Sequence record: MZ475892.1
Strand: one strand, 5' to 3'
DNA: 64,000 nt
Shown: one piece after another, positions 12,453 through 54,903 of the stretch
How positions within the stretch are numbered: position 1 is the first letter of the stretch
Layout of the letters: the number at the start of each line of letters is the position of its first letter
The notes under the pieces: generated by a model
Database searches by the model: none
What the model was told of the DNA's origin: nothing
Seen by the model: the letters and a program-made list of their open reading frames with translations, nothing else
Translations under genes and position numbers: made by a program

Positions 12453-12713
12453 ATGTATCAATATGACCGCGATGAATTGAATGATCTGCCGCTTGACGTG
12501 CTGCATAGCGAAGCTGAAAAGCGTGGCTTGCTCGCTGACCTGGACGACGATGATGATTGTCCTGACCGTGCAGTGCTGGTGGGCATGATCATTGATGATC
12601 AGAACGAGCGCAATGCCGAAGACGAAGAGGAAGAGCAGCGCCGTCAGATGCAAGATGACGCTGACGATCACCGTCGCATGTTAGACGAACGCGACGGCTC
12701 AGACGACTGCTAA
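12453..12713 (+). CDS. Small acidic protein with an HeH-like module
   Basis: GGAGA RBS; LNDLPLDVLHSEAEKRGL..DRAVLVGMI. Confidence 0.7.
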   Translation: MYQYDRDELNDLPLDVLHSEAEKRGLLADLDDDDDCPDRAVLVGMIIDDQNERNAEDEEEEQRRQMQDDADDHRRMLDERDGSDDC

Positions 12714-12714
12714 C

Positions 12715-13053
12715 ATGCTATACTCTGGGCAGCAATACGATACACTCAGTCCTGACCAGTTGAATGAGTGTTTCAATCTGATTGAAAGTTGCATGGTGGC
12801 CTCTGGCTGCCGTGGCTTTCAGATAGTGTTATCACCATCTGGTCATGGCGATTGTCGTAGCGTCGTCCACATTCAGCACCCACAGTATGCAGGTCACATT
12901 GAGTTCCCCTCAGTTGACCGTGATACTTTTCGTGTAACACTCGTCGCAACACGCGGTTGCTATGACAGCCGCACAGTGTTCGTACCAAATTCAGATACAG
13001 CCTATTCAGTGATAGGTCTGTATCTCTCAAACTTTATAGGGGCTACAAAATGA
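12715..13053 (+). CDS. Hypothetical protein
   Basis: Abuts its neighbours. Confidence 0.65.
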   Translation: MLYSGQQYDTLSPDQLNECFNLIESCMVASGCRGFQIVLSPSGHGDCRSVVHIQHPQYAGHIEFPSVDRDTFRVTLVATRGCYDSRTVFVPNSDTAYSVIGLYLSNFIGATK

Positions 13054-13394
13054 AACGCCGCGTTATTCGTATCGATCAGTCAGAGTTCAACGGTGAAGCG
13101 CTTGTCTTCCCACCATCATTCAACATCACCGGCATTGACGTTGTGGTGCTTGTGACCGTGAAGCACGAAGATTTCGGTGGCTTGAAGTTTCAAGATACCT
13201 ATCGTGTGAACGAACTACGTGTAAGCGAACATACAAATCCCCTGCGTCAGGAGATTGAGATCGTAGAGTACAGCAAACTGCCGAACGATGAAGCAATCTT
13301 CACACGACTACTCGACGTTGATTATTTCGACGACGACATTGCAGAGCGTGACCTGCGTCTGTACGATGCACCGACCACAATCGTCACTGCGTAA
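13050..13394 (+). CDS. Hypothetical protein
   Basis: ATGA overlap with the upstream gene. Confidence 0.7.
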   Translation: MKRRVIRIDQSEFNGEALVFPPSFNITGIDVVVLVTVKHEDFGGLKFQDTYRVNELRVSEHTNPLRQEIEIVEYSKLPNDEAIFTRLLDVDYFDDDIAERDLRLYDAPTTIVTA

Positions 13395-13402
13395 TAATCT
13401 TT

Positions 13403-13429
13403 AGGGCTGCCATCTTGGTGGCCCTTTTT
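13403..13429 (+). terminator. Intrinsic terminator
   Basis: AGGGCTGCCA-TCT-TGGTGGCCCT followed by TTTT. Confidence 0.8.
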
Positions 13430-13433
13430 GTTT

Positions 13434-13441
13434 TCTGTAAA
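13434..13441 (+). promoter_or_regulatory. TCTGTAAA motif
   Basis: Directly after a terminator and upstream of the next operon. Confidence 0.5.
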
Positions 13442-13477
13442 CTACACGCACAATCCCAACAATGCGAGAACGCACAG

Positions 13478-13852
13478 ATGCCAAAGCGCCGCTTTTATTT
13501 GATGTTCTTTATCAGTCAGGCAGAACTCGACGCCAAGACTTTCTATCAACACAACATGCGCATCCTGACAACGATACGCCGCACACGCTGCATCTTCCTT
13601 GTGGTAAGAGAGACTGGTGAAGTCTATGTGCCAGGCAGCGCCGTGTATCAGTCTGCAATCGAAGAAGATCTAACGCAGATGGTCTTTGACGATCTGCACA
13701 AGGCCACCGAGTCTGTGAATGCGGTTGAGTCCTTTGCTCAAGCCATCGCAGTAAACAAAAACGATAAGACAGTTCGCTACTGCGGCCGCAATCCAGAGGT
13801 GAGTGTCGTCTTCTTTGATCGCATGTTCACGAAAGTGGAGGTTCATATATGA
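13478..13852 (+). CDS. Hypothetical protein (start uncertain)
   Basis: ORF downstream of the terminator. Confidence 0.6.
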   Translation: MPKRRFYLMFFISQAELDAKTFYQHNMRILTTIRRTRCIFLVVRETGEVYVPGSAVYQSAIEEDLTQMVFDDLHKATESVNAVESFAQAIAVNKNDKTVRYCGRNPEVSVVFFDRMFTKVEVHI

Positions 13853-15055: not shown

Positions 15056-15097
15056 GCTGAAATAGCTATCGCGCATAATACGCTCCTGTGCTATACT
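15045..15097 (+). promoter_or_regulatory. Box promoter 3
   Basis: GCACTAATT-AGGCTG-AAAT, 32-nt spacer, TGC-TATACT. Confidence 0.6.
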
Positions 15098-17509: not shown

Positions 17510-17973
17510 ACATTCCATGGTACATGATGTTTGTTATCGGCTGTGTGCCTCTTTTCTTCTGCTACGTGACTATGCCGTGGTTTCGTGCTGCTGTCAAAAG
17601 ACGGTTGCTGTTTAAACCTCGTGACTACGATTCGGTGCAGGAGATCTTAGACACAGGCATCCCGCCTGAGATCTCTATCGAATGCTTGCAGGCTAGCTAT
17701 CGCAGCAACATGCCTGCCAAGTACGCACAACACATCGACTTCTATCCGCACAAGGAAGGCATCGTGTGTTGTCGCATGAAGTACGACGAGCAATTCCCAA
17801 TCGCTCGTATATTTAATGGTGTACTCGTCGCAAACATCGGACTGCTTGCTCTTCCTAGCAAAAAGATGCCGCGCATCACCATTAACTATTCCACTTATCA
17901 GGTCACGGACTTTGATAGTGATAATGAGTACCTGCACATTTATCTTCAACATAAGGAAGGCAAGCATGAATAA
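17506..17973 (+). CDS. Hypothetical protein with an N-terminal TM segment
   Basis: Hydrophobic N-terminus. Confidence 0.65.
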   Translation: MNIPWYMMFVIGCVPLFFCYVTMPWFRAAVKRRLLFKPRDYDSVQEILDTGIPPEISIECLQASYRSNMPAKYAQHIDFYPHKEGIVCCRMKYDEQFPIARIFNGVLVANIGLLALPSKKMPRITINYSTYQVTDFDSDNEYLHIYLQHKEGKHE

Positions 17974-19018
17974 CGAATCTGCAATGATCGACGAAGACGT
18001 TCTCGAATGGCTCGAAGACCTGACCCGTCATAAGTTGCTGGACGTGATTGGCTTAATCAACAATCTGATTTTCGTCCATCGTCCTGTTCTCGATCTGCCG
18101 ACACTCGGTACGGACGAAGATGTAGCAGCACTGTCGCACGCTGACCTGACAACGTTGTTCCGTCTGGTTGCACCTGAATGCTCTGTCGATACAAACACGC
18201 TGAGCAATCTACAACTGCTTGGGCTTATGCTCAATCAGAAAGGCGTTGTTGTGTTCTCTCTGCCAAACAACAACAGCCCTATTCTAACTGCCCGTACATT
18301 CAACGTGCCTAATAAGCCGCAGCGCTTGAACCCAGCTTCATCTAAGGGTGAGATTGCTACTGCTGTTAGCGCGTGGCTATTCGGACTGTTCCCGCTTGAG
18401 CTACGTTCTGATCAAAACGACATGCCGCGTGAGAACGGCCTGTACCTTGCCAAAGACGAGCATGAGCAGATTCGTTTCGGGCGTTTGTTCCGTAACGGCG
18501 CAGAAGGTGATGGCTGGACTTTCTGCGAAAGCTATTCTGATGCTACAGCTACTTACTGGCATCACAGCGATTCTCCTGTGGACGACGAACTGCCTATGAG
18601 TTTGCTGCATAGCTGGCTGCAAGTCTCTGCAACCACTTCACCAAACGAAGTGCATAACGAAAACGTCAGTGTGCTGGTAACTGACTCGCAGCGCATCTTT
18701 GCTTTCCTGCGCAGTCTGAGCCAACACGTTAAAGCTGAGCTGGTGGCCAACTTTGATGGCGTGCTTAACTCGACACATACCAGTGTCGAATCTATCGGGC
18801 GTCTGACGCGTGCCGACTGGACAGCCGCTGCCGTAGCAGTAGCAGATGATAAAGACATGAAGGACGGACTTGGCTCATGGGAAGAGCACAGCGCGTGGGA
18901 TTGTTTCGTGGCTACGTTGCAAAGTCTACGCTTCAATTTTGATACACGGGAATTCGACCCGATGTATGACTATGGGAAACACGACAATGAGACCGATATT
19001 GATCGAGGAGACGAATAA
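17966..19018 (+). CDS. Hypothetical protein with an HeH-like module
   Basis: AAGGAAGG RBS; VAALSHADLTTLF...LSNLQLLGLM. Confidence 0.75.
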   Translation: MNNESAMIDEDVLEWLEDLTRHKLLDVIGLINNLIFVHRPVLDLPTLGTDEDVAALSHADLTTLFRLVAPECSVDTNTLSNLQLLGLMLNQKGVVVFSLPNNNSPILTARTFNVPNKPQRLNPASSKGEIATAVSAWLFGLFPLELRSDQNDMPRENGLYLAKDEHEQIRFGRLFRNGAEGDGWTFCESYSDATATYWHHSDSPVDDELPMSLLHSWLQVSATTSPNEVHNENVSVLVTDSQRIFAFLRSLSQHVKAELVANFDGVLNSTHTSVESIGRLTRADWTAAAVAVADDKDMKDGLGSWEEHSAWDCFVATLQSLRFNFDTREFDPMYDYGKHDNETDIDRGDE

Positions 19019-20412: not shown

Positions 20413-20514
20413 ATGATTAACAACTACTGCCCGTTTCGCGCTGTGATGTACCACGCTTCAATCATCCTTCTCGCCATTTGCTCTGGCGTTGTTTTAGCCC
20501 ACGCACATTTCTGA
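20413..20514 (+). CDS. 33-aa peptide MINNYCPFRAVMYHASIILLAICSGVVLAHAHF (below the ORF-track cutoff)
   Basis: GAGGA RBS 7 nt upstream; its stop overlaps the RBS of the radical SAM gene. Confidence 0.55.
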   Translation: MINNYCPFRAVMYHASIILLAICSGVVLAHAHF

Positions 20515-20525
20515 GGAGAATAATC

Positions 20526-21665
20526 ATGATGCGTAACTTCACGGCAATCCTGCCAGTAACCTGTAATGCCGATTGTTCATTCTGCCCTGAGAAAGAAATG
20601 GAGCAGAAAGCTACGAACCGCCAGTGGCTGACTAATCTCATTGCGCAGATTAATGACCATGCCGGTGAGTTCGACCACGTTTCAATCTCTGGTGGTGAAC
20701 CTACGCTCAAGCCAAAGTTCCTGTTTGAAGTGATCGATGCGATTCGCACTCAAACGGATATCGATAAAGTTGGACTCACGTCAAATGGTCGCTTCCTGAA
20801 TAAGCAAGACAGCATCTTCCAGTTCCTTGATCTGAACACAGACGACATGCTGGAAAGCAAGCTGTCCCATCTGAATATCAGCCGTCATTCATTCGACGAT
20901 GCCAAGAACAACGAGATCATGAAAGTGCGTTACACGTACACGCTTGATGACCTCGTGAAGTTTAGACGTCAACTCGGCACAAAGCTGAGCTTCCACATTA
21001 ACTTTGTTATCAACGAGCACAACATCGATAACATTGAGTGGGAGTTTGCACAGGCTAATCGATTCATGATGGAGAACCCGTGGATCGATGTAGTGTTCCG
21101 CGTTGACTACGCAAACGAAAAGCTGAATCGTCGTCTGCGTCGTTACGGCCTGTCTGTGCAAGCGTGGCGTGATGCAACTCGCGGCTCTATTCGTGATGAA
21201 CGCATAGCGCGTGAGAATCTGAAAAAGAAACCCAAACTTGTTCAGTTGTTCGACGGTGTATTCAGTGGTACAACACAGGACAATGACGGTACATTTACCG
21301 ATGCGTGTCCAAGCTGTTTCGTGCATCGCAGCCAGAAGATTCATAACAACCATGCGTGGCTCAAAGCATCCTCGTTCGAACCGAACGTAGACGAAGAGGA
21401 ATACACTGAGTACGTGTTCCACATGGACGGTGAGCTTTACTACGACTGGTCGCGTGCCGAGCCTGTGCCTGACGTAGAGAAGAAACCACGCAAACACAAA
21501 GCCATTCGCATTGTCCAGAAAAAAGCGGAAGAAGATGATATGGATGAAGACATGCCTGCATCTTCTCGTATGGGTTGTCAGTATAGAACTGTCGGATGTT
21601 CTTACGGTGAATCAGAATCTGCTGGTGGCTGTTCATTTAGATCTCCTGGCAGCTGTAGCTTTTAA
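20526..21665 (+). CDS. Radical SAM enzyme with a Cys-repeat C-terminal tail
   Basis: CNADCSFC (CxxxCxxC), ISGGEPTL, TSNG, NISRH; GAGGAG RBS. Confidence 0.88.
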   Translation: MMRNFTAILPVTCNADCSFCPEKEMEQKATNRQWLTNLIAQINDHAGEFDHVSISGGEPTLKPKFLFEVIDAIRTQTDIDKVGLTSNGRFLNKQDSIFQFLDLNTDDMLESKLSHLNISRHSFDDAKNNEIMKVRYTYTLDDLVKFRRQLGTKLSFHINFVINEHNIDNIEWEFAQANRFMMENPWIDVVFRVDYANEKLNRRLRRYGLSVQAWRDATRGSIRDERIARENLKKKPKLVQLFDGVFSGTTQDNDGTFTDACPSCFVHRSQKIHNNHAWLKASSFEPNVDEEEYTEYVFHMDGELYYDWSRAEPVPDVEKKPRKHKAIRIVQKKAEEDDMDEDMPASSRMGCQYRTVGCSYGESESAGGCSFRSPGSCSF

Positions 21666-37556: not shown

Positions 37557-38948
37557 ATGATTTTCGATCTGCGCAAAAGTTTGGCCATGGTTCGTACCGT
37601 AATCGATGACCAAGTAATCTATAACTTCTACAACATGATTGGCCGCGATATGCAACTGCCCGGTACTACTCTCAAAGAGATTATCGACGTGCAGCGTAAG
37701 GGCGAACTGTGCACCAACATCATGTGGGGTACTCAGAAGATGGAGTATCGCACACTCAGATTCGATGAGCGTGGTGATCTTCTCTTAGACGTGACCGTTG
37801 GTCCGCATTGCTACGCACGGCTCTCTTACGATCAGATTGAACACTATGGGCGCAAAGAGTTTAAGGCTATTAACTGCATCGAGATCGATAGCTACCTCGC
37901 CCGTGACATTAGAGCGCATCTTCGCGCAGTGGGCCAAACTGAGCCTAAGCTCGAATGGTATGACAACGTGTCGGATGATGAACTGAAGGACGCTCTACTT
38001 TCAGTTGGTCACATGGGACCTCTGGCTTATGAAGGTAAATCTCGTAACCAGTTAGAGGACATGTTTGAGAAATTCCAGCGTAAGCACGATGCAGAATACA
38101 AGTACACGCACGCGCATATTGGCTTAGACCCAGACGAAAAGCTGCCTGCTGATTTGTATGAAGATGAGGCACGCTCAATCACTCGTCGTTCTTTTGCTCC
38201 TCAGAAGACTGTCGATATGATGATCACTGAGATCTCAAACGTGATGCGCATGTTCGATATCTGGGATTCAGCGCCGACATCCGAGACGCATGAGTGGTCA
38301 ATGCAGGAGGCGTACATGGCCTTCTATAACAGCTTAGTGATTGATAGCGATGGCAGCCGTCTGCGTGAACTGAAAGATAATCCACAGTTCGCTATCAACT
38401 TCATCTACGGCATGGCGGCAGACCTGAATTGGATTCACATCAACGAGATGACCGAAGACTATCGTGGCTCGGTTGTGAATCGCATCCTGCAGGAGATTGC
38501 TGTTGAGATCAGCACCTCTGATGATTACTGCACGACGGAGCACGGCATCGCTCTTATTAAGAAAGAAGAAGAGACAGAAGAAGAGGAGGAGGATGCTTCT
38601 GAGCCCGTCTCCATCGAAAAGAAAAAGAAGAAAGGCTTCCCGGATATTCGCTCAGTAGAAGAGGTGAACTATGACGCACTGCATATCATCGAGATTACAT
38701 ACAAACTGCCCAAGCAGCCTAAGCTGCGCACTAAGCTAGACGTACTGCAATCTCGTGAGTGCTATCTTGAGCACTTCTTCGGTTGTTTGAAAGAAAATGA
38801 TTGGCATAGATTAGACAATATCACTAATCTTGACCTGCGCCGTATTGTTGGTGCTGTTACTAAATCTAATGGTGGTAGATTCAGCCACAACGCCCTGTTA
38901 AACATAATTAAACGTGCAGCTAAGAAACTGGCTGCCACTGAGTTCTAA
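37557..38948 (+). CDS. Hypothetical protein with an HeH-like module and an E tract
   Basis: AGGAGA RBS; YDNVSDDELKDALL..KSRNQLEDMF. Confidence 0.8.
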   Translation: MIFDLRKSLAMVRTVIDDQVIYNFYNMIGRDMQLPGTTLKEIIDVQRKGELCTNIMWGTQKMEYRTLRFDERGDLLLDVTVGPHCYARLSYDQIEHYGRKEFKAINCIEIDSYLARDIRAHLRAVGQTEPKLEWYDNVSDDELKDALLSVGHMGPLAYEGKSRNQLEDMFEKFQRKHDAEYKYTHAHIGLDPDEKLPADLYEDEARSITRRSFAPQKTVDMMITEISNVMRMFDIWDSAPTSETHEWSMQEAYMAFYNSLVIDSDGSRLRELKDNPQFAINFIYGMAADLNWIHINEMTEDYRGSVVNRILQEIAVEISTSDDYCTTEHGIALIKKEEETEEEEEDASEPVSIEKKKKKGFPDIRSVEEVNYDALHIIEITYKLPKQPKLRTKLDVLQSRECYLEHFFGCLKENDWHRLDNITNLDLRRIVGAVTKSNGGRFSHNALLNIIKRAAKKLAATEF

Positions 38949-40453: not shown

Positions 40454-40460
40454 GGTTACT

Positions 40461-40898
40461 ATGAAATTTGATCAAGCACCAACGAAAGCACAACTCGTGC
40501 TGCTGGCCCTCGCTCTCGAATCCGTTCTCCTCTCTATGGAGAAAACGTTTATCAACCGTAATCTGCTGGAGCAGTTACTTGCGAAGTACGGCATCTCGTT
40601 TAACGATCTGAAAGAGTTGCGAGAGTACGGCGAAAAGCATTCCGCCATCGGTACCAGCGTTGCTCAAGTTATGGAGATAGCTGCCTTGCATGTGGCTCAT
40701 CTGAAAACAGAACCTGTGCCTGAATACAGTCAAGACGACCTTGATCTAATTCGCGTAGAATACGAGCCAATCGATACGTCTGTCCTACGCCAGGGCGCTG
40801 TGAATGATGGGGTTATCACAGTGCAGCAAGCAGCCACTTTTGAGCGCGATCAGATACTGACTGCTATTCTTGAGTACCGACTGCGCTCAGAAGCATAA
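40461..40898 (+). CDS. Hypothetical protein
   Basis: GAGGT RBS. Confidence 0.75.
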   Translation: MKFDQAPTKAQLVLLALALESVLLSMEKTFINRNLLEQLLAKYGISFNDLKELREYGEKHSAIGTSVAQVMEIAALHVAHLKTEPVPEYSQDDLDLIRVEYEPIDTSVLRQGAVNDGVITVQQAATFERDQILTAILEYRLRSEA

Positions 40899-41154: not shown

Positions 41155-41976
41155 ATGCCAGAAGCACGCAAACCTCGCCCAGCTGATCGTTTCGCTAAAG
41201 CCCGTGCAGAGAAAAACTCACCGGAGCGTCAAGATGCGGCAGCCCAGCGCACGTATAAAGACACTCCGCCTAAATCTGTTCAGGTGAAACTTGATGCTGT
41301 GGCAGCTTCTAAGAAGAAAGTTTCTCGCGGCCCCAAGGCCTCTCGTCCACGTCAGTCGCCTGCTGTTGACGCAGCACCAAAGCCTCGCATTCGTGATGAG
41401 GAACGTGTGTACAATCTCGTACACATGATTCTCTCTGCGTGGAAAGCCGATGCAGAAAACGCGGCAGCAAGTGTGGGAATCATTAAAGTGTCTCGTCGTA
41501 AGATTGAGGGTGCGTTACGCGATCTCAAGAATACGCGCTTCACTAAAATCCCAGGCTTAATCAATGACGTGCTTGTCTACAATGAACTGGTAGCTGAGTT
41601 CGGACAGTGGGTGTACGTCGAGCACGACAGTCCTGATTGGATTTTTGTGCGCCTGCCTGAAAACAGCACGCCTGTGATTCGCGCTGACATTAGCTATGCC
41701 AAGACGGGTGAAACTTCCACGTCTGTTTCGACTTCTAGTGAAGTTCTGCTGAAAGATCTTAGCGAAGACGAAGAAGATGAGATCCCCGAGAATGTCGAGT
41801 ACGACGATGCGGACGAGACTGACGAAGACGAAGAGGAGCCGTATGACTACAGCGCTTGGTCTCTGCGTGACCTGCAGGAGTATGCGAAGCGCTATGACTT
41901 CTTGCAGCCCGACACTGAGGGGTTCGATGATCGCGAGAAGTTGATAGCAGCCATCGAGCTGGGGGAACAGCACTAA
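41155..41976 (+). CDS. Basic-tail / acidic-tract protein with a C-terminal HeH-like module
   Basis: R/K/A/P-rich N-terminus, D/E tract, YSAWSLRDLQEYAK..DREKLIAAI. Confidence 0.8.
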   Translation: MPEARKPRPADRFAKARAEKNSPERQDAAAQRTYKDTPPKSVQVKLDAVAASKKKVSRGPKASRPRQSPAVDAAPKPRIRDEERVYNLVHMILSAWKADAENAAASVGIIKVSRRKIEGALRDLKNTRFTKIPGLINDVLVYNELVAEFGQWVYVEHDSPDWIFVRLPENSTPVIRADISYAKTGETSTSVSTSSEVLLKDLSEDEEDEIPENVEYDDADETDEDEEEPYDYSAWSLRDLQEYAKRYDFLQPDTEGFDDREKLIAAIELGEQH

Positions 41977-42263: not shown

Positions 42264-43856
42264 ATGGCACGTTTCGAAACTAACACTAACCTGGTTGGCA
42301 AAACTATCGTCCTGCTGAACGGCACCAAAGCGAAGATTGAAGACGCTATCGTTTCTGGCTACAAAGTGAAAGGCCAGACCAAGCGCATCGCAACCCGTGA
42401 CGTTATCAAAGAGGGTGCGCACTTTAAAGAAATCGAGCGCACGCCGCTGAGCCAGCTGGAAGATACTGGTGAAGGTTATGTGAAGTTGAAAGAAGCCAAA
42501 GCTGCTTCTAAGAAAGCGCCTGCGAAAGACGCTAAAGCTACTGGCAAAAAAGCTGCGGCAAAAGACAAGCCTGCTAAGACCAGCAAAAAAGCTGCCGCTA
42601 AAGATAAGCCAGCGAAAGAGCAAGAGCCGAAAGTTCGCCGTAAGTCTGCGAAAGAGCAGGGCAACGATTATCAGGAACTCGCGCAGGCTATCATCAAAGG
42701 CGGTCGCCGTGCAGCGCCAGTTGAAATTGACAGCGTAGACGAAGCGCTGACCGATGCAATCGCTAAGCGTCTGACCGCTGTTGTCGAATCGTCTGAGATT
42801 GCGAAACTCGCCGCTGATAACAAAACGCCGATCGCTAACGCACTGACCGTAACTTACGGTGCTGAGTTTGCGACTGATGCAAACGTTGTGCAGATTACGC
42901 TGAACCTGCAATACGCTAAGCCGACTGCTGTTGAGTCTGCCGCTCCTACTCTGGAGAATGCCGAAGCAATCGCAATGCGTGCTGCTAAAATGGCCGCGCC
43001 GAAAGTGAGCGCTAAACTCAAGAAGGCAGTGCGTGAAGCATTCGATATTGAAACAGACCTTGAGCTGGGTACTGTGATTATGTCAGGCGATGATCAATTC
43101 GCTTACTACGGCGAAAGCGCGAAGCACGCTGGCAAAGCGCTGCTGTATGTTGTCGAAACTGACAAGTTCAAATCTGTCTTGGCCTCTACTCTGACCGACT
43201 ACGAACTGCCTGCTGATGAAGAAGCTGAGGCAGAAGAAGAGGAGGAAGAAGAAGAAGAGGAGGAAGAAGAACCCGCTGATGACTTCGACGACGAAGAGGA
43301 AGAAGATGCGGACGATGCAGATGATGCCGACGATGCTGATGGCGACGACGACGAATTCCAGTACGTTGCTGTAGGCGATGAACACTTTGCTCTGGTCAAC
43401 AAAAAGATCACAGCCAAGTATCACGATGCACTGGCTGAGCAATTCGGCGTTAGCACCGAAGCGCTGGTCCCAGGCTTAGTGTTGACCAACGGCGAGATCA
43501 CTTTCGCTTATCTGGGCAACGATAGCAAAGGCGGCCTGCTCGTTATCGACCTCGACGACGATGCGGACGAAGACGACAACGTTCTGGTCTACCCGAAAGC
43601 CGACGTTAAATCTCTGACCGACTTCTCTCCTGTGCTGGGTGATGCAGATGAAGAAGACGCAGACGATGCAGAAGAGACCGACGAAGAAGACGAAGATCAG
43701 GACGACGACTTCGAATTTGACGATGCGCCGACTGCCGACCTCGAAGATCTGTCCGACGATGAGCTGCGTGACCGCGCTGTTGAGATGGGCCTGACCACTG
43801 TACGCAAAGCTGACAAAATGAACGCCAAGCAACTGCGTGCGCTGCTGTCTGAATAA
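42264..43856 (+). CDS. Polyampholyte multidomain protein (K/A tract, two D/E tracts, repeated beta modules, C-terminal HeH-like module)
   Basis: 530 aa; GAGGAG RBS in a hairpin; low-complexity tracts are directly visible. Confidence 0.88.
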   Translation: MARFETNTNLVGKTIVLLNGTKAKIEDAIVSGYKVKGQTKRIATRDVIKEGAHFKEIERTPLSQLEDTGEGYVKLKEAKAASKKAPAKDAKATGKKAAAKDKPAKTSKKAAAKDKPAKEQEPKVRRKSAKEQGNDYQELAQAIIKGGRRAAPVEIDSVDEALTDAIAKRLTAVVESSEIAKLAADNKTPIANALTVTYGAEFATDANVVQITLNLQYAKPTAVESAAPTLENAEAIAMRAAKMAAPKVSAKLKKAVREAFDIETDLELGTVIMSGDDQFAYYGESAKHAGKALLYVVETDKFKSVLASTLTDYELPADEEAEAEEEEEEEEEEEEEPADDFDDEEEEDADDADDADDADGDDDEFQYVAVGDEHFALVNKKITAKYHDALAEQFGVSTEALVPGLVLTNGEITFAYLGNDSKGGLLVIDLDDDADEDDNVLVYPKADVKSLTDFSPVLGDADEEDADDAEETDEEDEDQDDDFEFDDAPTADLEDLSDDELRDRAVEMGLTTVRKADKMNAKQLRALLSE

Positions 43857-43898: not shown

Positions 43899-43931
43899 CA
43901 CTGACAACAAAGTTGATTGAGGAATCACATT

Positions 43932-47359: not shown

Positions 47360-50300
47360 ATGTCCGAGAACAATCAAAGCGGAGCTACTCGCTTCGGCAC
47401 AGAAGTGCAGGCCGGCATCGCAGAAGCGCAACGCCGTGCTAACTCTGCTGAGAGTGGCAAGCTGAACAAATGCACGATCATCGTGCTGACTTCGATTGAC
47501 GCCAACCAGCGTTACTCTTATCTGTCCGCAGACGAACAACTGCGCGAAGAACTGGTGCGTGGTAAAGTAATCAATCGTCTGCCTGACCTGTTAGAGCGTG
47601 CTGGTGGTAATACCGCTGCTGACAATAACAGCGCGTTCCACATCCTGCACCCAAACAACGGCGTGCCTACCTCGATCGATGCTCGTATCAAAGTGGGCGA
47701 AGGCAATGCGGTCATTCTGTCATATACTGTAAACAAAGCAGTGACAGAGATGCACGGTAGCTTATCGCTTGCTCTGTTTGCATCTGGCGCCGAAGACTTA
47801 AATGATCTGGCCGCTGATTTCGGTATTCACGCAATTGCGATTGTTGAAGAATCGAAAGCCGCTGAGTTCATCAAAGGACTTGAAGCTCAGGTGGAAGCGT
47901 TGAATATTGTAAATCTCACTAGCATTGATGATTCTAACGATTCGTTAGACCTGCCAGTGATTGACTTCGCTGCATTAGCGGGCAATCCTACAACAGTGCT
48001 TACGGGTGCTGTGCGTACCTTCATCATGCAATCAATCAGCGGCGAAGTCTTCGCTGCAATCCCTAATAACGGAGAACTGAACGTGAAAAACGATAACGTG
48101 GCTCAGCCTGCTGACCTGGAAGAAGACTTCGACAACAATGATGAGATTGTTGATCAGAACGGCGGTGAAGGCGAAGTTACTGGCGAAGAGCTGCTGGGCT
48201 ACAAAGCAGAAAATCTTTCGCTCGACCAAATGCGTAGTGCGCTTGAAGCGATCAACTACGACCTGTCTGAAATGACGGAAGAAGCAATCCGTGAAGCGTT
48301 CGAAACTGAACAGAACCTTTACCTGGGTGGCGGCGATGACGAATCTTCCGAAGAAGAGGAAGATGAAGACGCCGCTGATGTTGACAGCGACGAAGAAGAA
48401 GAGGAAGAAGACGAGGAGTTCGATGCTCCTGCGTATCTGGCTCAAGCGCTCGCTGCTGAAAACTTTAGCCGTAGCGATCTGAAACTGCTGGTCAAGTCGC
48501 AAGACCTGAAAGTGATGAAGAACGACACTCCTGAAACTCTGGTGCAGAAGCTGCTGGACCTGGTGCAGGACGCATCGTCTGATGAAGTGTTCGAACTGAT
48601 CACTGTGTTCGTTGAACTGCTGGACGAGCACGGCGTTGAGTGTGACGCGCTGCGTGCTACCATCGCTGAGGACGAAAGCGATGAAGACGAAGAAGAGGAC
48701 GGCGAAGACGAAGACGCCGATGAAGATGGCGACGACGAAGAAGAGGAAGATGAAGAGGAGTCTGATGAAGACGAATCTGAAACCGAATCTGATGACGAAA
48801 CCGAAACTCTGTCTGTGGCTGACGTTACCGATCCTCTCGATTACTTCCGCTTCAACGGTGGTGACCTGACTGCCGAGCAGCGTATTGCTGCTGTCGAATC
48901 GATGGGTACAAGCACTGTTGGTCTGAACATTGTTCAGGTCATGAAAGCGTTCAACGAAATCCGCTCACAGTCTAACCTGATCGATATTGCCGCTGATGAA
49001 GCCGACTCTGCGCTGTACGATATGCTGACTGCGCTGCCGTACTCAACGCTGCTGAGCTTCGCTCAAGAGATTGAGCTGGACATTGATGGCGATGAGTCTG
49101 CCGAAGATCTCGTCACTCTGCTGATGGACGAATCTACTGCCGACAGCGATACGCTGAAAGCGTTGGCGTATGTGTTCGAAACCTACGGCGGCCTGGGTGT
49201 TGAAGCAGATGATATCCTGCTGATGGACTGGCATGAAGCGCTGGCGCTGGTTATTCCTGTGTATGCATCGTCAGACGAAGTTGAGTCCGATGCAGAAGAC
49301 GAAGACGAAGACGTTATCGCTGATGAAGATTCGTCTAACGCTAACCTGAAGTTCCTGAAATCTGTTGACGTCAACAACCCTGTCGGCCCGATGCTCGAAG
49401 TTGATATGGACCGCACTCTGGTTATCAACTACACCTTCACTGACGGTAACACCTACCGCGATGTGCAAGATGAGCTGGCTGATATCGGTGGCGTTAACTA
49501 CCGCTTCCCGTTCAATCTGGGCAAAGCTGGTAAAGCAAACAAGAGCAGCGCACCTGGTAGCCTGATTGCTCCTGCTGAACATCTGATCGCAATGTTAGAC
49601 CGCGCCGGTACTACTCGCTTCTTAGCTGACCCGAACACCTTCGATGTTGGTGTGTGGGCAGAATCTCTGGAGCGTATGCTGAACGCAGAAATCGCTAACA
49701 ACCTGTATGCTGGTCGCATTGAAGACGGCGCTGACCCGCAGCAAGCTGGCATCGTAGTCGGTGACTTCATCGATGAAGACGAGCAAGCAGAAGTTGCTGA
49801 CCTAGGTCTGCTGGATGAAGATGAGCTGGAAGCGTACACTGGTGATCATCTGCCGATTGCAAGCCTGTACAATGCGCAAGCCCGCGTACGTCCAGTCAAC
49901 GTCGATAGCTCTTACGTTGCACTGAGCACCGTAGTGCTGAACGTTGCAGTCCCTGGCTTCTGGTGTGACTCTGATGTTGGTCGTCTGGTGCAAGCGTGTG
50001 TTAATCGCGTAATCAGCCTGGCAGAAAGCGTTGAAGGCATCAAAGTGTATGCAGGCTTCACTCTGGAATCTGCTGCGCTGCTGAACAACGGTCGCCTGTA
50101 CGAAGTTGTTGGTGCGCTGCGTGAGATGGACGGTGTGCAGTCTTACTCTGCCGCTGACGCTGCTAACTTCTCAGAAGCGGAAGATATTATCGAAGTGGCG
50201 TCTTCTATCGATGATCGTGACCTGCCGTTCACTGTACTGGCAAGCGGCCTGTCTGGCGCAACGTTTGAAAACGGCGGTGACCTGACCGTGCTGGTTCCGT

Positions 50301-50365
50301 GCTCTGTCTTCGACGAAGAGGAAGATGAGTCCGAAGAGGACGAGTCAGAAGAAGACGAAGAGTAA
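47360..50365 (+). CDS. 1001-aa highly acidic protein with several HeH-like repeats
   Basis: GAGGAG RBS in a hairpin; several D/E tracts; ENLSLDQMRSAL, ENFSRSDLKLLV, ALPYSTLLSFA modules. Confidence 0.88.
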   Translation: MSENNQSGATRFGTEVQAGIAEAQRRANSAESGKLNKCTIIVLTSIDANQRYSYLSADEQLREELVRGKVINRLPDLLERAGGNTAADNNSAFHILHPNNGVPTSIDARIKVGEGNAVILSYTVNKAVTEMHGSLSLALFASGAEDLNDLAADFGIHAIAIVEESKAAEFIKGLEAQVEALNIVNLTSIDDSNDSLDLPVIDFAALAGNPTTVLTGAVRTFIMQSISGEVFAAIPNNGELNVKNDNVAQPADLEEDFDNNDEIVDQNGGEGEVTGEELLGYKAENLSLDQMRSALEAINYDLSEMTEEAIREAFETEQNLYLGGGDDESSEEEEDEDAADVDSDEEEEEEDEEFDAPAYLAQALAAENFSRSDLKLLVKSQDLKVMKNDTPETLVQKLLDLVQDASSDEVFELITVFVELLDEHGVECDALRATIAEDESDEDEEEDGEDEDADEDGDDEEEEDEEESDEDESETESDDETETLSVADVTDPLDYFRFNGGDLTAEQRIAAVESMGTSTVGLNIVQVMKAFNEIRSQSNLIDIAADEADSALYDMLTALPYSTLLSFAQEIELDIDGDESAEDLVTLLMDESTADSDTLKALAYVFETYGGLGVEADDILLMDWHEALALVIPVYASSDEVESDAEDEDEDVIADEDSSNANLKFLKSVDVNNPVGPMLEVDMDRTLVINYTFTDGNTYRDVQDELADIGGVNYRFPFNLGKAGKANKSSAPGSLIAPAEHLIAMLDRAGTTRFLADPNTFDVGVWAESLERMLNAEIANNLYAGRIEDGADPQQAGIVVGDFIDEDEQAEVADLGLLDEDELEAYTGDHLPIASLYNAQARVRPVNVDSSYVALSTVVLNVAVPGFWCDSDVGRLVQACVNRVISLAESVEGIKVYAGFTLESAALLNNGRLYEVVGALREMDGVQSYSAADAANFSEAEDIIEVASSIDDRDLPFTVLASGLSGATFENGGDLTVLVPCSVFDEEEDESEEDESEEDEE

Positions 50366-51984: not shown

Positions 51985-52032
51985 CATTAATTGAAGCAAG
52001 TCGCTTCTCATCCCATACAGGAAATAAAAACC

Positions 52033-52833
52033 ATGGCTAAATCTGCTAAAGTAACCGTAACCGTCGCACAGAAAGTTCTGGCTCAGATGCTGGGTGTTGT
52101 TGTAGCGAACGCAAGCGAGAAAGAACTCGTTGCGATTCTGTCTGACCTGGGCCTGACTGTTGCTGCGAAAGGTAAAGGTGCTAAAGCTGAGAAAGCTGCG
52201 AAGGGCGGCAAGAAAGCTAAAGCCGCTACCGTTGCTCAGATCGTTAAGGCCGTTGAAGAAGAGGAAGCTATCTCCCTCGACGGCGTGAGTGAAGATGACC
52301 TGCGTGCAGCGGTCGTCAAAGCTAAGCTGGCTAAGGCCAACAAAGCTAAAGCGCTGGACGAAGAGGAGTTGACTGAACTCCTGACCGACGCAATGGGTGC
52401 CGAGTCTGATGAAGACGAGGAAGAGGACGAAGAAGAAGAGGACGAAGACGAGGACGAAGACGACTCGGACGACGAAGACGAAGATGAAGACGACGAGGAC
52501 TCAGATGATGAAGATGAGGACGAAGACGACGAAGATTCGGACGACGAAGACGAGGACGAAGATGATGAGGAGGAAGACGAAGACGAGGATGAAGATGAGG
52601 ACGAAGATGAAGATCTCGACCTTGACGGCCTCGACGAAGACGAACTCCGCGCCCTCGTGATCGACAACAAGCTGGCCACTAAGGCCAAAGCTAAAAAGAT
52701 GGACGAAGACGAACTTCGTGAACTGTGTGAATCCCACTTCGGCGGCGACGATGAAGACGAAGACGAAGATGAGGACGAAGACGATGAAGACTTCGACGAT
52801 GAAGACGAAGACGAAGACGACGACGACGAATAA
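52033..52833 (+). CDS. Polyampholyte protein: basic N-terminus, two HeH-like modules, about 70-aa D/E tract and a D/E tail
   Basis: AGGA RBS before ATG 52033; the DSDDEDEDEDDE unit repeats three times. Confidence 0.85.
   Translation: MAKSAKVTVTVAQKVLAQMLGVVVANASEKELVAILSDLGLTVAAKGKGAKAEKAAKGGKKAKAATVAQIVKAVEEEEAISLDGVSEDDLRAAVVKAKLAKANKAKALDEEELTELLTDAMGAESDEDEEEDEEEEDEDEDEDDSDDEDEDEDDEDSDDEDEDEDDEDSDDEDEDEDDEEEDEDEDEDEDEDEDLDLDGLDEDELRALVIDNKLATKAKAKKMDEDELRELCESHFGGDDEDEDEDEDEDDEDFDDEDEDEDDDDE
52400..52615 (+). repeat. Coding low-complexity GAY/GAR repeat (D/E tract)
   Basis: Near-pure Asp/Glu codons with a 36-nt period. Confidence 0.9.
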
Positions 52834-52890
52834 GTCCTGATCTGCCGCTGCCCTGCAAGACTAATGAGTGTCTGCGCAGGGCAAGAAATA

Positions 52891-52979
52891 TTCGAAAAAT
52901 AGTTCGAATTATTTCGCAAAAAGTTTGAAAAATTCCTGTCGTTGTTTATTGCACATAGTAATATTCGACTACAGGAATT
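52891..52979. other. AT-rich segment with phased TTCGAA-like repeats and an inverted repeat
   Basis: TTCGAA 52891, TTCGAA 52903, TTCGCA 52913, TTTGAA 52924; AATTCCTGT...ACAGGAATT. Confidence 0.55.
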
Positions 52980-53046
52980 AAACCTGAAAAATTTTACTTT
53001 TATCCAACGCGACGAGTCGCACAAAATAAATTCACGGAGTTATGCC

Positions 53047-53568
53047 ATGACTAAGAAAATCATTTCCGGCCTGAACAAAAACCTGAAAGCTATCGCTAAA
53101 TCAGAAGCTGCCCTGGCCAAAACTGTTGCTGCTACCAACAAAGAGATCGAAAACCTGGGTTCACAGCGTGCTGGTATCGAAGCGCAGATCGCTGAACTGT
53201 CTGGCGTTGCTGCTCCTGACAAAGCTGATAAAAAAGCTAAAGGCGCGAAAGCTGAAAAAGCGGCCAAGCCTGCTAAAGCTGAAAAAGCAGCTAAAGCCGG
53301 TAAGAAAGAAAAAGCTGCTAAAGCTGAAAAGCCAGCCAAAGCTGATAAAAAAGCTAAAGGCGCCAAAGCAGAAAAAGCAGAAAAAGCTACTAAGCCTGCT
53401 AAAGCTGAAAAAGCTGGCAAGAAAGAAAAAGCTGCTACCAAGCCTGCTAAAGCTGATAAAAAAGCTAAAGGCGCCAAGGCGGACAAAGCTGCTAAAGGCG
53501 GTAAAGCTGACAAAGCCGGTAAGAAAAAGAAAGCGCAGTCTGATGACTTCGAATTCGAAATGGAATAA
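53047..53568 (+). CDS. Histone H1/Hc2/AlgP-like K/A-rich protein with an N-terminal coiled coil
   Basis: KADKKAKGAKA(E/D)K three times, KPAKAEKA repeats, acidic end SDDFEFEME; GGAG RBS. Confidence 0.82.
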   Translation: MTKKIISGLNKNLKAIAKSEAALAKTVAATNKEIENLGSQRAGIEAQIAELSGVAAPDKADKKAKGAKAEKAAKPAKAEKAAKAGKKEKAAKAEKPAKADKKAKGAKAEKAEKATKPAKAEKAGKKEKAATKPAKADKKAKGAKADKAAKGGKADKAGKKKKAQSDDFEFEME

Positions 53569-53600
53569 GCAAGCGGTCGCATAGCGCGATAACTTGATCG

Positions 53601-53632
53601 AGAGGGCAGCGCTGACGGGCGTTTGCCCTCTT
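53601..53632 (+). terminator. Long hairpin, probable terminator
   Basis: AGAGGGCAGCGCT-GACG-GGCGTTTGCCCTCT. Confidence 0.6.
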
Positions 53633-53666
53633 GTCGTATCTAACTCATTTTCGAGGCTCTTTAAAA

Positions 53667-54152
53667 ATGTCCAAACAAGAAGTATTCAACCGTCTTGATG
53701 ACCTTCATGCAAAAGAGCGTGAGCGTATCAAACAAGCCAAGCAAGGCCCCTCCTATTTCGAACTGACGAACCTGCGTATTGAAGCAGCCGCTCGTCTCGC
53801 TCGTGCCCTACAAACTCTCAAAGCCGCAAACGTTGTTGGTAACGTTGAAGGTGTCTCTCTGCAGGAAGATGCGCTTGAAGTCGCTCAAGCCTACTGGTCT
53901 GCTATCTTAGAAGGCTTAACCCCTGTAGTAGTTGAAGGCTCGCCTATGCGCAAGCTGCTTGATGGTATGCCTGCATGTATCGAAGCGTTCCGTGTTATCG
54001 TAATGGAAAGCGCTATGCGTGAACATCTAGTCGTTCAATGCAATGCGATTGCAGATGACATTAAGGGTTTCCCTCAACTGACTGGGCATGTTCTGCCTAC
54101 TGTTCAACACACCTGCGAAGAGGGATGCAACTGTGGCTCAATCACTGAGTGA
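53667..54152 (+). CDS. Hypothetical protein
   Basis: GAGG RBS before ATG 53667. Confidence 0.75.
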   Translation: MSKQEVFNRLDDLHAKERERIKQAKQGPSYFELTNLRIEAAARLARALQTLKAANVVGNVEGVSLQEDALEVAQAYWSAILEGLTPVVVEGSPMRKLLDGMPACIEAFRVIVMESAMREHLVVQCNAIADDIKGFPQLTGHVLPTVQHTCEEGCNCGSITE

Positions 54153-54903
54153 GAAGATTAACCGTTACTTCAATCTGATGGAGGACATCCGTGCTGAGAT
54201 GTTCCGCGTGATTGATGTATCTGACCGTTACTTCGGTATCGTTAGTTTCAACACTAACATGCAGGCACTGCAAACCACACTGGTGAGCAAATCCACCCTG
54301 ATGGAAGTTAAGCTGCTTGAAGGTATCACTGGTGCGGAGCTGATTGCGTTTGGCAATATGGTTCACACTGTAGAGCAATGGGTTGCTGGTGGCATGAAAG
54401 GCGCTTTCCCTATCGAGCAGACCAAAGACGTGTATGCCAAATATCGCGCTGCTACCTCAGATGAACCACAGGCACAAAGTGAACCTAAGCCTGCTAATAC
54501 CCCGCAGCCTGATGCTGATGAGTTAGACAGCCAGGAACTGGACAATATCAAAGTTCAACTTCTGTCCTTCGATGACTCTGAACTGATCGACCATGCCGCT
54601 CAGTTTAAACTTGGGACGCGTACACGCCTGCGCAGAATGGGCCGAGATGATTTGTTGGACATGTTGTTTGATCATCATGGTATCTACGCAGAAAACGACC
54701 AGCGCCGCAATGAAAGTGTTGCAGACTGGTTAGAGCGTATACCTCTTGATGATGCTCTACGCGAAGTCGACCGCATAGATGATAGCAGTGTACTCGATCA
54801 CGTTGCGGACGCTATGAGCGTTATGTCGGGTGTCAATGACGCTGTGACGCGAGCGCGTATTAAGCAGGCTCTGAAAGAGCTACACACTAAGCCCGCGCAG
54901 TAA
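54088..54903 (+). CDS. Hypothetical protein with an HeH-like module (start uncertain, possibly 54178)
   Basis: LLSFDDSELIDHAAQFKLGTRTRLRRMGRDDLLDML. Confidence 0.75.
   Translation: MFCLLFNTPAKRDATVAQSLSEKINRYFNLMEDIRAEMFRVIDVSDRYFGIVSFNTNMQALQTTLVSKSTLMEVKLLEGITGAELIAFGNMVHTVEQWVAGGMKGAFPIEQTKDVYAKYRAATSDEPQAQSEPKPANTPQPDADELDSQELDNIKVQLLSFDDSELIDHAAQFKLGTRTRLRRMGRDDLLDMLFDHHGIYAENDQRRNESVADWLERIPLDDALREVDRIDDSSVLDHVADAMSVMSGVNDAVTRARIKQALKELHTKPAQ

What the first reader, a model, noticed from the sequence alone, without database searches (positions are those of the whole stretch)
12453..54666. A 36-residue HeH-like module reused in at least seven genes
Seen: ungapped alignment with conserved hydrophobic positions 1/4/9/13/18/27/32/36: LEDLSDDELRDRAVEMGLTTVRKADKMNAKQLRALL (43740), LDGVSEDDLRAAVVKAKLAKANKAKALDEEELTELL (52276), LDGLDEDELRALVIDNKLATKAKAKKMDEDELRELC (52621), LLSFDDSELIDHAAQFKLGTRTRLRRMGRDDLLDML (54559), YDNVSDDELKDALLSVGHMGPLAYEGKSRNQLEDMF (37959), YSAWSLRDLQEYAKRYDFLQPDTEGFDDREKLIAAI (41848) and VAALSHADLTTLFRLVAPECSVDTNTLSNLQLLGLM (18122). 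Looser copies occur in ORFs 12453 and 47360. Known: this helix-extended-helix pattern is that of SAP/LEM/Rho-N domains, which bind nucleic acid or a shared partner protein (LEM binds BAF). Inference: a common docking tag that recruits unrelated phage proteins to one scaffold or to phage DNA.
Basis: partly seen in the sequence, partly recalled or inferred. Interest (0 to 1): 0.8.

Follow-up and report, generated by a model that had tools for sequence, protein, structure and literature searches.

The report
Reused small helical module, jumbo phage
A roughly 40-residue three-helix module, a distant look-alike of the SAP/Rho-N "helix-extended-helix" domains, is reused on acidic flexible linkers in four (not seven) proteins of an Erwinia jumbo phage and, in other phages, on DNA recombination and replication proteins, so it is probably a tethered targeting tag whose ligand is still unknown.

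Summary
The window is the last 64 kb of Erwinia jumbo phage pEa_SNUABM_34. These are the C-terminus of the 530-aa protein (43740), two copies in a 45% D/E protein (52276, 52621) and one in the 271-aa protein (54559). Copy 41848 is a separate, sub-threshold Ish1/SAP-like candidate. Copies 37959, 18122 and the ORF 12453/47360 "copies" are at chance level, as is the eight-position hydrophobic pattern itself.

AlphaFold predicts a confident three-helix unit (pLDDT 85-90) between disordered poly-D/E linkers. Foldseek finds no significant PDB match. Its named viral matches are mostly "Rho termination factor N-terminal domain" and "HeH/LEM" proteins. No Pfam HeH-type model reaches its threshold.

Among 1.84 billion proteins only 19 carry the module, in up to five copies. 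Carriers include a protein encoded next to replication genes, small acidic proteins beside UvsX-like recombinases, and those recombinases' own C-termini.

Best reading: a divergent Rho_N/SAP-like tethered binding module for DNA-metabolism proteins. Its ligand is untested.

The parts
42264..43856 (+). Gene g42264 (530 aa, phrog_33433). It has a small N-terminal domain, a K/A/P-rich basic tract, two repeated small domains each followed by a poly-D/E tract, and a C-terminal module.
   Evidence: Orthologues in all relatives align to the last residue.
43740..43847 (+). Family copy 1, the C-terminal module of g42264, two residues before the stop.
   Evidence: Weak Pfam SAP hit at E 0.002 (18.1 bits against a cut-off of 23.9) and LEM at 0.054.
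51991..52833 (+). Gene g51991 (phrog_30618; probable true start is the ATG at 52033). It is 45% D+E with pI 4.05. It has an N-terminal helical plus K-rich region, then two modules separated and followed by poly-D/E.
   Evidence: AlphaFold model.
52276..52383 (+). Family copy 2, the first module of g51991.
   Evidence: Predicted helices 87-96, 102-106 and 110-120 at pLDDT 86-91.
52621..52746 (+). Family copy 3, the second module of g51991.
   Evidence: The isolated-module model has pLDDT 85 and helices 10-19, 25-30 and 33-44.
52411..52613 (+). Poly-D/E linker between the two modules. It is encoded by imperfect GAAGAC-type tandem repeats, varies in length among orthologues and is predicted disordered.
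54088..54903 (+). Gene g54088 (271 aa). A conserved N-terminal domain of about 130 aa is followed by a C-terminal tail whose number of small helical modules varies from 0 to 2 among orthologues.
54559..54684 (+). Family copy 4 (probable). This is the module of g54088 with the same x-H-x-G extension as copy 3.
54763..54882 (+). Second, different C-terminal helical segment of g54088. It is conserved in the Alexandra, SNUABM_22, _17 and _1 orthologues. Its pattern is HeH-like only by eye.
   Evidence: No Pfam support.
37557..38948 (+). Gene g37557 (463 aa).
38634..38783 (+). Family copy 5, degenerate. It is orthologous to a canonical copy in the Alexandra homologue and keeps the C-x-x-E-H-F-F-G tail.
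   Evidence: Profile-profile E 3.9e-6 and 9e-4. Not detected from the window sequence alone. Translation.
37959..38066 (+). Only the first 13-16 residues resemble the module. Unresolved.
41848..41955 (+). C-terminal module of g41155, after an acidic linker. It is a separate Ish1/SAP-like HeH candidate, conserved in the Yoloswag and JA29 orthologues, replaced by a more family-like module in Alexandra, and absent in pEa_SNUABM_5.
   Evidence: Profile-profile E 0.022, in register.
40761..40868 (+). New weak candidate at the C-terminus of ORF 40401-40898. Not significant.
   Evidence: PSSM 15.7 bits. HMM E 0.3. hhalign E 0.08-0.16.
18122..18229 (+). Not supported.

Best explanation
Shown. A homologous module of 36-44 residues occurs five times in four genes of this phage: g42264, g51991 (twice), g54088, and a decayed copy in g37557. 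It is predicted to fold on its own into a 10-residue helix, a loop with a short lysine-rich helix (T-x-x-K-A-K-K) and a 12-residue helix. It sits between disordered poly-D/E tracts.

Inferred, fold. The module is a divergent member of the helix-extended-helix class and is closest to the Rho_N-like small domains common in phage proteins.

Inferred, function. It acts as a tethered, low-affinity binding unit on a flexible acidic leash. It brings the protein it is attached to onto nucleic acid, or onto one shared partner in the phage replication and recombination machinery. Several copies would add avidity. The acidic linkers would act as spacers and perhaps as autoinhibitory DNA mimics, as in the acidic tails of SSB, gp32 and RecA. 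I favour nucleic acid as the ligand over a protein, but only slightly.
For: Family reality.

Conservation.
- The module columns are gap-free and 83-89% conserved in g51991 orthologues, while the linker varies in length.
- The copies are old: third-codon-position identity is 0.28-0.44.
- Both g51991 copies and the g42264 copy are present in Alexandra, Yoloswag, JA29 and pEa_SNUABM_5.

Fold.
- AlphaFold gives pLDDT 84-91 for both modules in the full protein and 85 for the isolated module, and the linkers score about 50.
- Foldseek against viral models lists seven 'Rho termination factor N-terminal domain' proteins and one 'HeH/LEM domain' protein among the named matches. TM-scores are 0.65-0.75 (normalised to the query) with 45-47 aligned columns.
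- The best TM-score against the PDB (0.68, rmsd 1.7 over 41 columns) is to 1zbh_A, 3'hExo. From my own knowledge this protein contains a SAP domain.
- The only Pfam leads are SAP, LEM, Rho_N and Ish1.

Modularity.
- The g54088 family carries 0-2 modules, the g51991 family 2-3 and the g42264 family 1-3.
- In g41155 the module type is swapped or lost between orthologues.

Functional context elsewhere.
- A protein with four to five copies is encoded right after PDDEXK_1 and AAA_24 genes and near DNA polymerase A.
- Two-copy small acidic proteins lie directly upstream of RecA_N/UvsX-like genes in two unrelated contigs.
- Those recombinases carry a copy at their own C-termini (hhalign probability 93%, E 3.5e-7).
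- One three-copy protein has a weak SSB-family N-domain hit.
- In the window, all copies lie within 17 kb upstream of the topoisomerase II genes.

From established knowledge. SAP domains are DNA-targeting add-ons of eukaryotic repair proteins (Ku70, RAD18, PIAS). Acidic C-terminal tails of SSB, T4 gp32, T7 gp2.5 and RecA are interaction or autoregulatory elements.
Against: No statistically significant link to any HeH family was found.
- All Pfam scores are below the curated cut-offs.
- A profile search of PDB sequences finds no SAP, LEM or Rho chain.
- E. coli Rho's N-terminus gives hhalign E 0.62.
- Foldseek against the PDB gives E >= 2.3.

The middle segment is predicted as a short helix, so a plain three-helix bundle or an HTH-like reading is not excluded. 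One marginal hit (P0022) is to HTH_38 repeats of a GIY-YIG protein.

The modules carry net charge -1 to -4 and sit in proteins of pI 4-5. That argues against strong non-specific DNA binding and fits a protein ligand equally well.

The window's own RecA-like protein has no copy. The neighbouring genes have no known function. No binding, localisation or expression data exist.

Confidence: 0.55

Rival explanations
1. Protein-docking tag (LEM-like logic). The module binds one common phage or host protein, or binds itself. Candidates are the recombinase, the SSB, the topoisomerase or the neighbouring K/A-rich basic protein. Tagged proteins would then co-assemble, and DNA would not be the ligand.
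For: The modules and their carrier proteins have net negative charge. The HeH fold can be a protein binder, as LEM binds BAF (own knowledge). The same tag sits on a recombinase, on its upstream neighbour and on a protein encoded beside replication genes, which is what a shared hub would look like. A K/A-rich repeat protein is encoded immediately downstream of g51991.
Against: No partner was identified. The conserved lysine-rich short helix (K23, A24 nearly invariant) looks more like a phosphate-contacting element. No co-variation or co-occurrence test was possible.
Confidence: 0.25
2. The acidic tracts are the functional part (a DNA mimic, a chaperone for basic proteins, or a polyampholyte scaffold). 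The helical modules are only structured 'islands' or stickers with no specific ligand of their own.
For: g51991 is 45% D+E. All carriers have long poly-D/E tracts. Basic K/A-rich tracts occur in the same proteins and next door.
Against: The modules are more conserved than the linkers, are gap-free, and keep specific residues across phages with only 60-75% nucleotide identity and in unrelated metagenomic phages. That is not expected of a passive spacer.
Confidence: 0.12
3. The similarity is a chance or compositional artefact: amphipathic helices in D/E/K/L-rich sequence.
For: The hydrophobic pattern alone occurs at the shuffled rate, and 18122, 41848 and 37959 are at or near chance against the family profile. 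A broadened profile also hits an unrelated Nudix ADP-ribose pyrophosphatase segment at E 4.5e-5 in the PDB sequence set, which shows that short biased profiles can mislead.
Against: For the core copies it fails. Orthologous copies score 47-70 bits. Only 19 of 1.84 billion representative proteins reach E <= 1e-3, and nearly all share the module-plus-acidic-linker design. AlphaFold gives confident, identical topologies for separate copies.
Confidence: 0.03

Closest known systems
Rho_N-like small domains of phage proteins (Pfam PF07498, 'Rho termination factor N-terminal domain-containing protein')
   Same: Size is about 40 residues. The design is helix, loop with a basic residue cluster, helix. 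They occur as add-ons in many otherwise unrelated phage proteins. They are the commonest named Foldseek matches to the module model. P0010, a two-module protein, gives a weak Rho_N hit at E 0.047.
   Different: No window copy scores against PF07498 at all. E. coli Rho's own N-terminus is not detectably similar (E 0.62). The module here comes in arrays of up to five copies separated by poly-D/E tracts, which is not a described feature of Rho_N proteins.
SAP domain (PF02037), the DNA-targeting module of Ku70, RAD18, PIAS and SAF-A
   Same: A 35-residue L...L...(G)K...L pattern. It is a tethered accessory module on DNA repair and recombination proteins. The g42264 copy scores SAP at E 0.002. The best PDB TM-score is to a chain that, from my own knowledge, contains a SAP domain (1zbh_A).
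   Different: The score of 18.1 bits is below the 23.9-bit cut-off. The 'extended' segment is predicted as a short helix. The module is net acidic. No DNA binding has been shown.
LEM / HeH / Ish1 domains (PF03020, PF12949, PF10281)
   Same: From my own knowledge, these belong to the same fold class. The g41155 C-terminal module hits Ish1 at E 5.5e-4, and its Yoloswag orthologue hits Ish1 at 0.07 and SAP at 0.18. LEM shows that this fold can dock onto a protein (BAF).
   Different: All hits are sub-threshold. BAF and a nuclear envelope do not exist in this host. This phage belongs to the Lu11/PaBG/Y3/Alexandra clade (PMC7412058), which I do not know to build a phage nucleus; that was not checked here.
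Acidic C-terminal tails of SSB, T4 gp32, T7 gp2.5 and RecA
   Same: A disordered acidic C-terminal extension on ssDNA-binding and recombinase proteins, used for partner recruitment and autoregulation. In metagenomic phages the module-plus-acid tail sits on RecA_N proteins and on a protein encoded beside replication genes.
   Different: Those tails have no folded module. Here a folded three-helix unit is embedded in the tail and repeated.

Membership tests
Pfam SAP (PF02037) | Sequence score at or above the curated gathering cut-off (23.9 bits) | tested here: not met
   The best window copy (43740 piece) scores 18.1 bits, E 0.002. One of 16 family copies hits at E 0.0062. The others do not hit.
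Pfam SAP (PF02037) | Two helices joined by an extended, non-helical linker (helix-extended-helix) | tested here: inconclusive
   AlphaFold predicts helix 10-19, a five-residue loop, a short helix 25-30, then helix 33-44. Foldseek against the PDB has no significant match, and the best TM-score (0.68) is to 1zbh_A.
Pfam SAP (PF02037) | Binds DNA | not testable with these tools
   Needs EMSA or NMR titration.
Pfam Rho_N (PF07498) | Sequence score at or above the cut-off (24.9 bits) | tested here: not met
   No window copy hits. The metagenomic protein P0010 scores 14.1 bits, E 0.047.
Pfam Rho_N (PF07498) | Detectable similarity to the N-terminal helical subdomain of Rho itself | tested here: not met
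   hhalign of the family profile against E. coli Rho residues 1-60 gives E 0.62.
Pfam Rho_N (PF07498) | Same fold as Rho_N-annotated proteins | tested here: inconclusive
   Foldseek against BFVD lists seven Rho_N-annotated viral proteins with TM-score 0.65-0.75 and probability 0.5-0.98, but E 0.4-3.3.
Pfam LEM (PF03020) | Sequence score at or above the cut-off (24 bits) | tested here: not met
   13.5 bits, E 0.054, for the 43740 piece. Two of 16 copies hit at E >= 0.062.
Pfam Ish1 (PF10281), for the 41848 module only | Sequence score at or above the cut-off (26.6 bits) | tested here: not met
   20.7 bits, E 5.5e-4, on the 52-aa piece, and 16.8 bits on the whole protein. The Yoloswag orthologue gives E 0.07.
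The phage module family itself (C-terminal parts of phrog_33433 and phrog_30618) | Significant profile match in register, outside the training set | tested here: met
   Met for 43740, 52276, 52621 and 54559. Met through the orthologue alignment for 38634-38783. Not met for 37959, 41848, 18122, ORF 12453 and ORF 47360.
Tri-helical helix-turn-helix DNA-binding domains | Structural or profile match to HTH families | tested here: not met
   No HTH Pfam family hits any copy. The PDB Foldseek list has only three weak HTH-containing chains at E 8.8-9.4. The one marginal library hit to an HTH_38-repeat protein covers only module positions 3-26.

The most novel reading that the evidence does not exclude
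The module is a dedicated address tag of a phage replication and recombination hub. All proteins that carry it (recombinase, SSB-like proteins, small hyper-acidic multi-module proteins, and in this jumbo phage g42264, g51991, g54088 and g37557) are gathered through it onto one partner or onto replicating phage DNA. The multi-module, poly-acidic proteins would act as multivalent scaffolds of a replication factory in a jumbo phage that builds no proteinaceous nucleus. This would be a folded-domain counterpart of the SSB C-terminal-tail interaction system.
Probability: 0.15. Interest if true: 0.7.

Novelty: new variant of a known kind. Interest (0 to 1): 0.4.

Why it matters
Small HeH/Rho_N-like domains are annotated on thousands of phage proteins, yet almost nothing is known about what they do there. 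This family gives a clean, testable case. The unit is 46 residues and confidently foldable. It is reused on flexible acidic leashes within one phage. In other phages it is fused to proteins whose function is known, such as RecA/UvsX-like recombinases. If the ligand is found, it would annotate a block of "hypothetical" jumbo-phage genes next to the topoisomerase genes. It would also show how phages address proteins to their replication machinery. The result is also a caution: three of the seven hand-aligned copies were pattern matches at the chance level.

Tried and rejected
Dead ends in database searches.
- Pfam, PHROG and NCBIfam scans of whole proteins and of the neighbouring genes gave no functional hit.
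- A profile of the narrow family against PDB sequences gave nothing.
- Foldseek of the whole g51991 model returned only noise, because most of the chain is disordered.
- phmmer of P0008 and P0011 against PDB sequences gave nothing useful.
- Pfam scans of extra candidate pieces (the second g54088 segment, the g37557 degenerate copy, the ORF 40401 tail, the g51991 N-terminus) gave no HeH-type hit.

The Nudix hit. The broadened profile (A5) hit residues 119-149 of Nudix ADP-ribose pyrophosphatases (8zr8, 8wv3, 9jax) at E 4.5e-5 to 1e-3. I reject this as homology for three reasons.
- The same chains are absent from the Foldseek list for the module model.
- The score (about 25 bits) would not be significant in the large library.
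- From my own knowledge, that segment is part of the Nudix sandwich. I did not check this here.

Scans for more copies.
- The other 200 kb of the phage genome holds no further copies; the best E is 0.64, in an off-frame ORF.
- tblastn of the module against 50,697 phage genomes found it only in the same 57 Erwinia, Dickeya and Yersinia jumbo phages.

Literature. Searches for SAP, HeH or Rho_N modules in jumbo phages, and for virion proteomics of this clade, gave nothing usable.

Full report
Origin. The window matches the last 64 kb of Erwinia phage pEa_SNUABM_34 at 100% identity (MZ475892.1, 264,306 bp; window position x corresponds to about record position 200,306 + x). The phage belongs to the clade of Alexandra, Y3, Yoloswag, pEa_SNUABM_5, the Dickeya JA/AD1 phages and Yersinia fHe-Yen9-02. 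A published analysis groups that clade with Lu11, PaBG and NCTB (PMC7412058). Nearly all genes in the record are annotated "hypothetical protein". The window also encodes a RecA-like protein (1-2397), a radical-SAM protein (20478-21665) and topoisomerase II subunits (54999-59464).

Observation. They lie in six ORFs:
- 17816-19018
- 37557-38948
- 41155-41976
- 42264-43856
- 51991-52833 (two copies)
- 54088-54903

The stated criterion was hydrophobic residues at positions 1/4/9/13/18/27/32/36. This criterion has no discriminating power. The real proteome holds 21 windows with 8/8 against 17.7 in shuffled proteins, and 207 against 192 at >=7/8. Only four of the seven copies are 8/8, and these are the four supported below.

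Which copies are one family. Inside the window, 52276 and 52621 match at E 4e-9. Leave-one-gene-out HMMs link 43740 with the g51991 copies (E 8e-5 and 0.008). I added the syntenic regions of Alexandra, Yoloswag, JA29 and pEa_SNUABM_5. An iterated HMM then converged on 17 copies with E 1e-13 to 1e-19:
- the C-terminus of every g42264 orthologue
- two copies in every g51991 orthologue
- one in the Alexandra homologue of g37557
- the g54088 copy

The consensus is L-x-x-L-D-E-D-E-L-R-x-x-V-V-x-x-K-L-x-T-x-K-K-A-K-K-M-D-E-D-E-L-R-E-L-L. Intermediate sequences make the homology of the g42264 and g51991 types plain; for example, the Yoloswag g42264 copy is 58% identical to 52621.

The 54559 copy. Because it had been in the first training set, I tested it separately.
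- An ungapped PSSM built without it gives 15.1 bits, above all 97,275 shuffled positions.
- The local HMM without it fails (E 57).
- Profile-profile comparison against orthologue alignments of all 89 window genes gives E 1.6e-5, in register. The noise floor is E 0.026 or worse.
- The single window sequence gives E 6e-4 over 43 columns.
- A broader profile with 16 metagenomic copies gives HMM E 4e-4.
- The pEa_SNUABM_17 orthologue has a more canonical copy at the same place (E 0.0017).
- The copy shares the x-H-x-G extension of the second g51991 copy.

I accept 54559 as a probable member.

The weaker copies.
- g37557 family. It scores E 3.9e-6 and 9e-4, but at residues about 360-409 (nt 38634-38783). 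There the Alexandra homologue has a canonical copy and the window has a decayed one with an insertion and the C-x-x-E-H-F-F-G tail.
- 37959. It aligns only over its first 13-16 residues (E 0.03-0.4) and scores 10.6 PSSM bits, with 0.23 expected by chance. It stays unresolved.
- 41848. Against the narrow family profile it scores -11 bits, which is chance level. It is nevertheless a conserved C-terminal unit behind an acidic linker, with the motif W-(S/T)-L-x-x-L-Q-x-(F/Y)-A in Yoloswag and JA29. It hits Pfam Ish1 at E 5.5e-4, which is sub-threshold. It is also the best non-family, full-length, in-register hit of the broad profile, at E 0.022, which is not significant after 89 tests. In Alexandra a more family-like module sits in its place, and in pEa_SNUABM_5 nothing does.
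- 18122. It scores -14 bits, and the profile-profile alignment is out of register.
- ORFs 12453 and 47360. No support.
- A new weak candidate lies at 40761-40868 (15.7 PSSM bits, other tests not significant).

The other 200 kb of the phage genome holds no further copy.

Structure. AlphaFold2 on g51991 with 11 orthologues gives pLDDT 84-91 for both modules and about 50 for the poly-D/E tracts. Each module is a 10-residue helix, a loop, a 5-6-residue helix and an 11-12-residue helix. The isolated 46-residue unit gives pLDDT 85 with the same topology.
- Foldseek against the PDB has no match below E 2.3. The best TM-score (0.68, rmsd 1.7, 41 columns) is 1zbh_A, 3'hExo. From my own knowledge this protein has a SAP domain, but the tool does not show which region aligned.
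- Foldseek against viral models returns the family itself first. The named matches are then dominated by "Rho termination factor N-terminal domain" proteins (ranks 10, 17, 19, 21, 24, 42, 50) and one "HeH/LEM domain" protein (rank 34). Their TM-scores are 0.65-0.75 and E-values 0.4-3.3.
- Pfam gives only sub-threshold SAP, LEM, Rho_N and Ish1 leads.
- E. coli Rho's own N-terminus is not detectably similar.

The HeH/Rho_N-like assignment is therefore the best available reading. It rests on consistent but individually non-significant signals.

Distribution and architecture. An exhaustive profile search of 1.84 billion representative proteins finds only 19 with E <= 1e-3. Apart from two marginal hits (P0022, a GIY-YIG protein with HTH_38 repeats, and P0023), they share one design: one to five modules separated by acidic linkers, behind varied N-terminal domains. 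Copy number differs among orthologues:
- g51991 family, 2-3
- g42264 family, 1-3
- g54088 family, 0-2

In the window the copies are ancient. Third-codon-position identity is 0.28-0.44, so this is protein-level conservation and not recent DNA duplication.

Functional context. The window neighbours have no known function. The metagenomic carriers are more informative.
- P0011 (four to five copies) is encoded directly after PDDEXK_1 and AAA_24 genes and close to DNA polymerase A.
- P0016 and P0019 are small acidic two-copy proteins with the same layout as g51991. P0016 matches phrog_30618 at E 3e-9. Both lie directly upstream of RecA_N/UvsX-like genes in two unrelated contigs.
- Those recombinases carry a copy at their own C-termini, followed by an acidic tail (HMM E 0.006 and 0.03; hhalign probability 93%, E 3.5e-7).
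- P0008 (three copies) has a weak SSB-family N-terminal hit and a YfbR-like neighbour.

The module is thus repeatedly fused to, or encoded beside, DNA replication and recombination proteins.

Mechanism. I commit to a tethered binding module on an acidic flexible leash that targets its carrier to nucleic acid or to one shared partner of the replication and recombination machinery. Arrays would give avidity. Three steps are shown:
- the family and its conservation
- the predicted autonomous fold and the disordered linkers
- the variation in copy number and the fusion partners

Three steps are inferred:
- the HeH/Rho_N fold class
- binding itself
- the identity of the ligand

The lysine-rich conserved centre (K23, A24) and the SAP analogy favour nucleic acid. 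The net negative charge of the modules (-1 to -4) and of the carriers (pI 4-5) favours a protein ligand or autoinhibition. I cannot separate these two with the tools at hand.

Verdict. The finding is a real but over-extended observation. Novelty is modest: an uncatalogued, divergent variant of a known class of small phage add-on domains, with an unusual array-on-acidic-linker design.

Noticed in passing
window 52942-53568: The gene immediately downstream of the hyper-acidic g51991 encodes a K/A-rich protein built of imperfect tandem repeats (63-nt unit, A-K-A-E-K-A-A-K-P type), reminiscent of histone H1 tails. A strongly basic and a strongly acidic protein are therefore encoded side by side.
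   Followed up: partly
window 51991-52033 and 17816-17966: Two start codons look too far upstream. Orthologues of g51991 begin at the ATG at 52033 (M-A-K...). The first 50 residues of ORF 17816 have no counterpart in the Alexandra orthologue, whose start aligns with the Met at about 17966.
   Followed up: partly
window 43218-43351, 43641-43690, 48671-48795, 50317-50358, 52411-52613, 52747-52829: Poly-D/E tracts in several genes of this cluster are encoded by imperfect GAA/GAC-type tandem repeats. Their length differs among orthologues, which suggests slippage-driven linker length variation.
   Followed up: partly
window 42264-42730 versus L003 32614-33612: The N-terminal 150 residues or so of g42264 resemble the N-terminus of the JA29 orthologue of the next gene (window 43917-45218) at E 4e-5. 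The two adjacent genes may therefore be old paralogues.
   Followed up: no
L017 8757-10334 and L018 1575-3251 (metagenomic phage contigs): RecA_N/UvsX-like recombinases carry the module at their C-termini followed by an acidic tail. The gene just upstream (one HNH gene apart in L018) encodes a small two-module acidic protein, and an MmcB-like gene lies a few genes downstream in both contigs.
   Followed up: yes
PDB chains 8zr8_A, 8wv3_A, 9jax_E (residues 119-149): The broadened module profile matches a segment of Nudix ADP-ribose pyrophosphatases without gaps at E 4.5e-5 to 1e-3. Foldseek sees no structural match, so this is probably a convergent D/E/L/K pattern. It is a warning about short biased profiles.
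   Followed up: partly
PDB 8c5z_A, 8aa9, 8aaj_A, 8c5y_A: The archaeal RPA 'AROD-OB-1' chains appear, at non-significant levels, in both the Foldseek list (E 2.7-7.4) and the sequence-profile list (E 0.9) for the module. This is an acidic helical domain attached to a single-strand-binding protein. It may be coincidence.
   Followed up: no
window 47360-50365: The 1001-aa protein (phrog_36461) has a weak Pfam LAIKA-domain hit at residues 759-784 (E 0.006) and its own poly-D/E tracts. No module copy was found in it.
   Followed up: no
L003 26857-27702 (Dickeya phage JA29): A paralogue of g41155 with a long C-terminal extension that contains further segments with an HeH-like pattern by eye.
   Followed up: no
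P0023 (285 aa, metagenomic): A protein with four repeats of a related roughly 33-residue unit, each preceded by C-G-P-K-x-G-x-x-R-W-T-K. It is a marginal hit (E 8.7e-4), and its origin and function are unknown.
   Followed up: no
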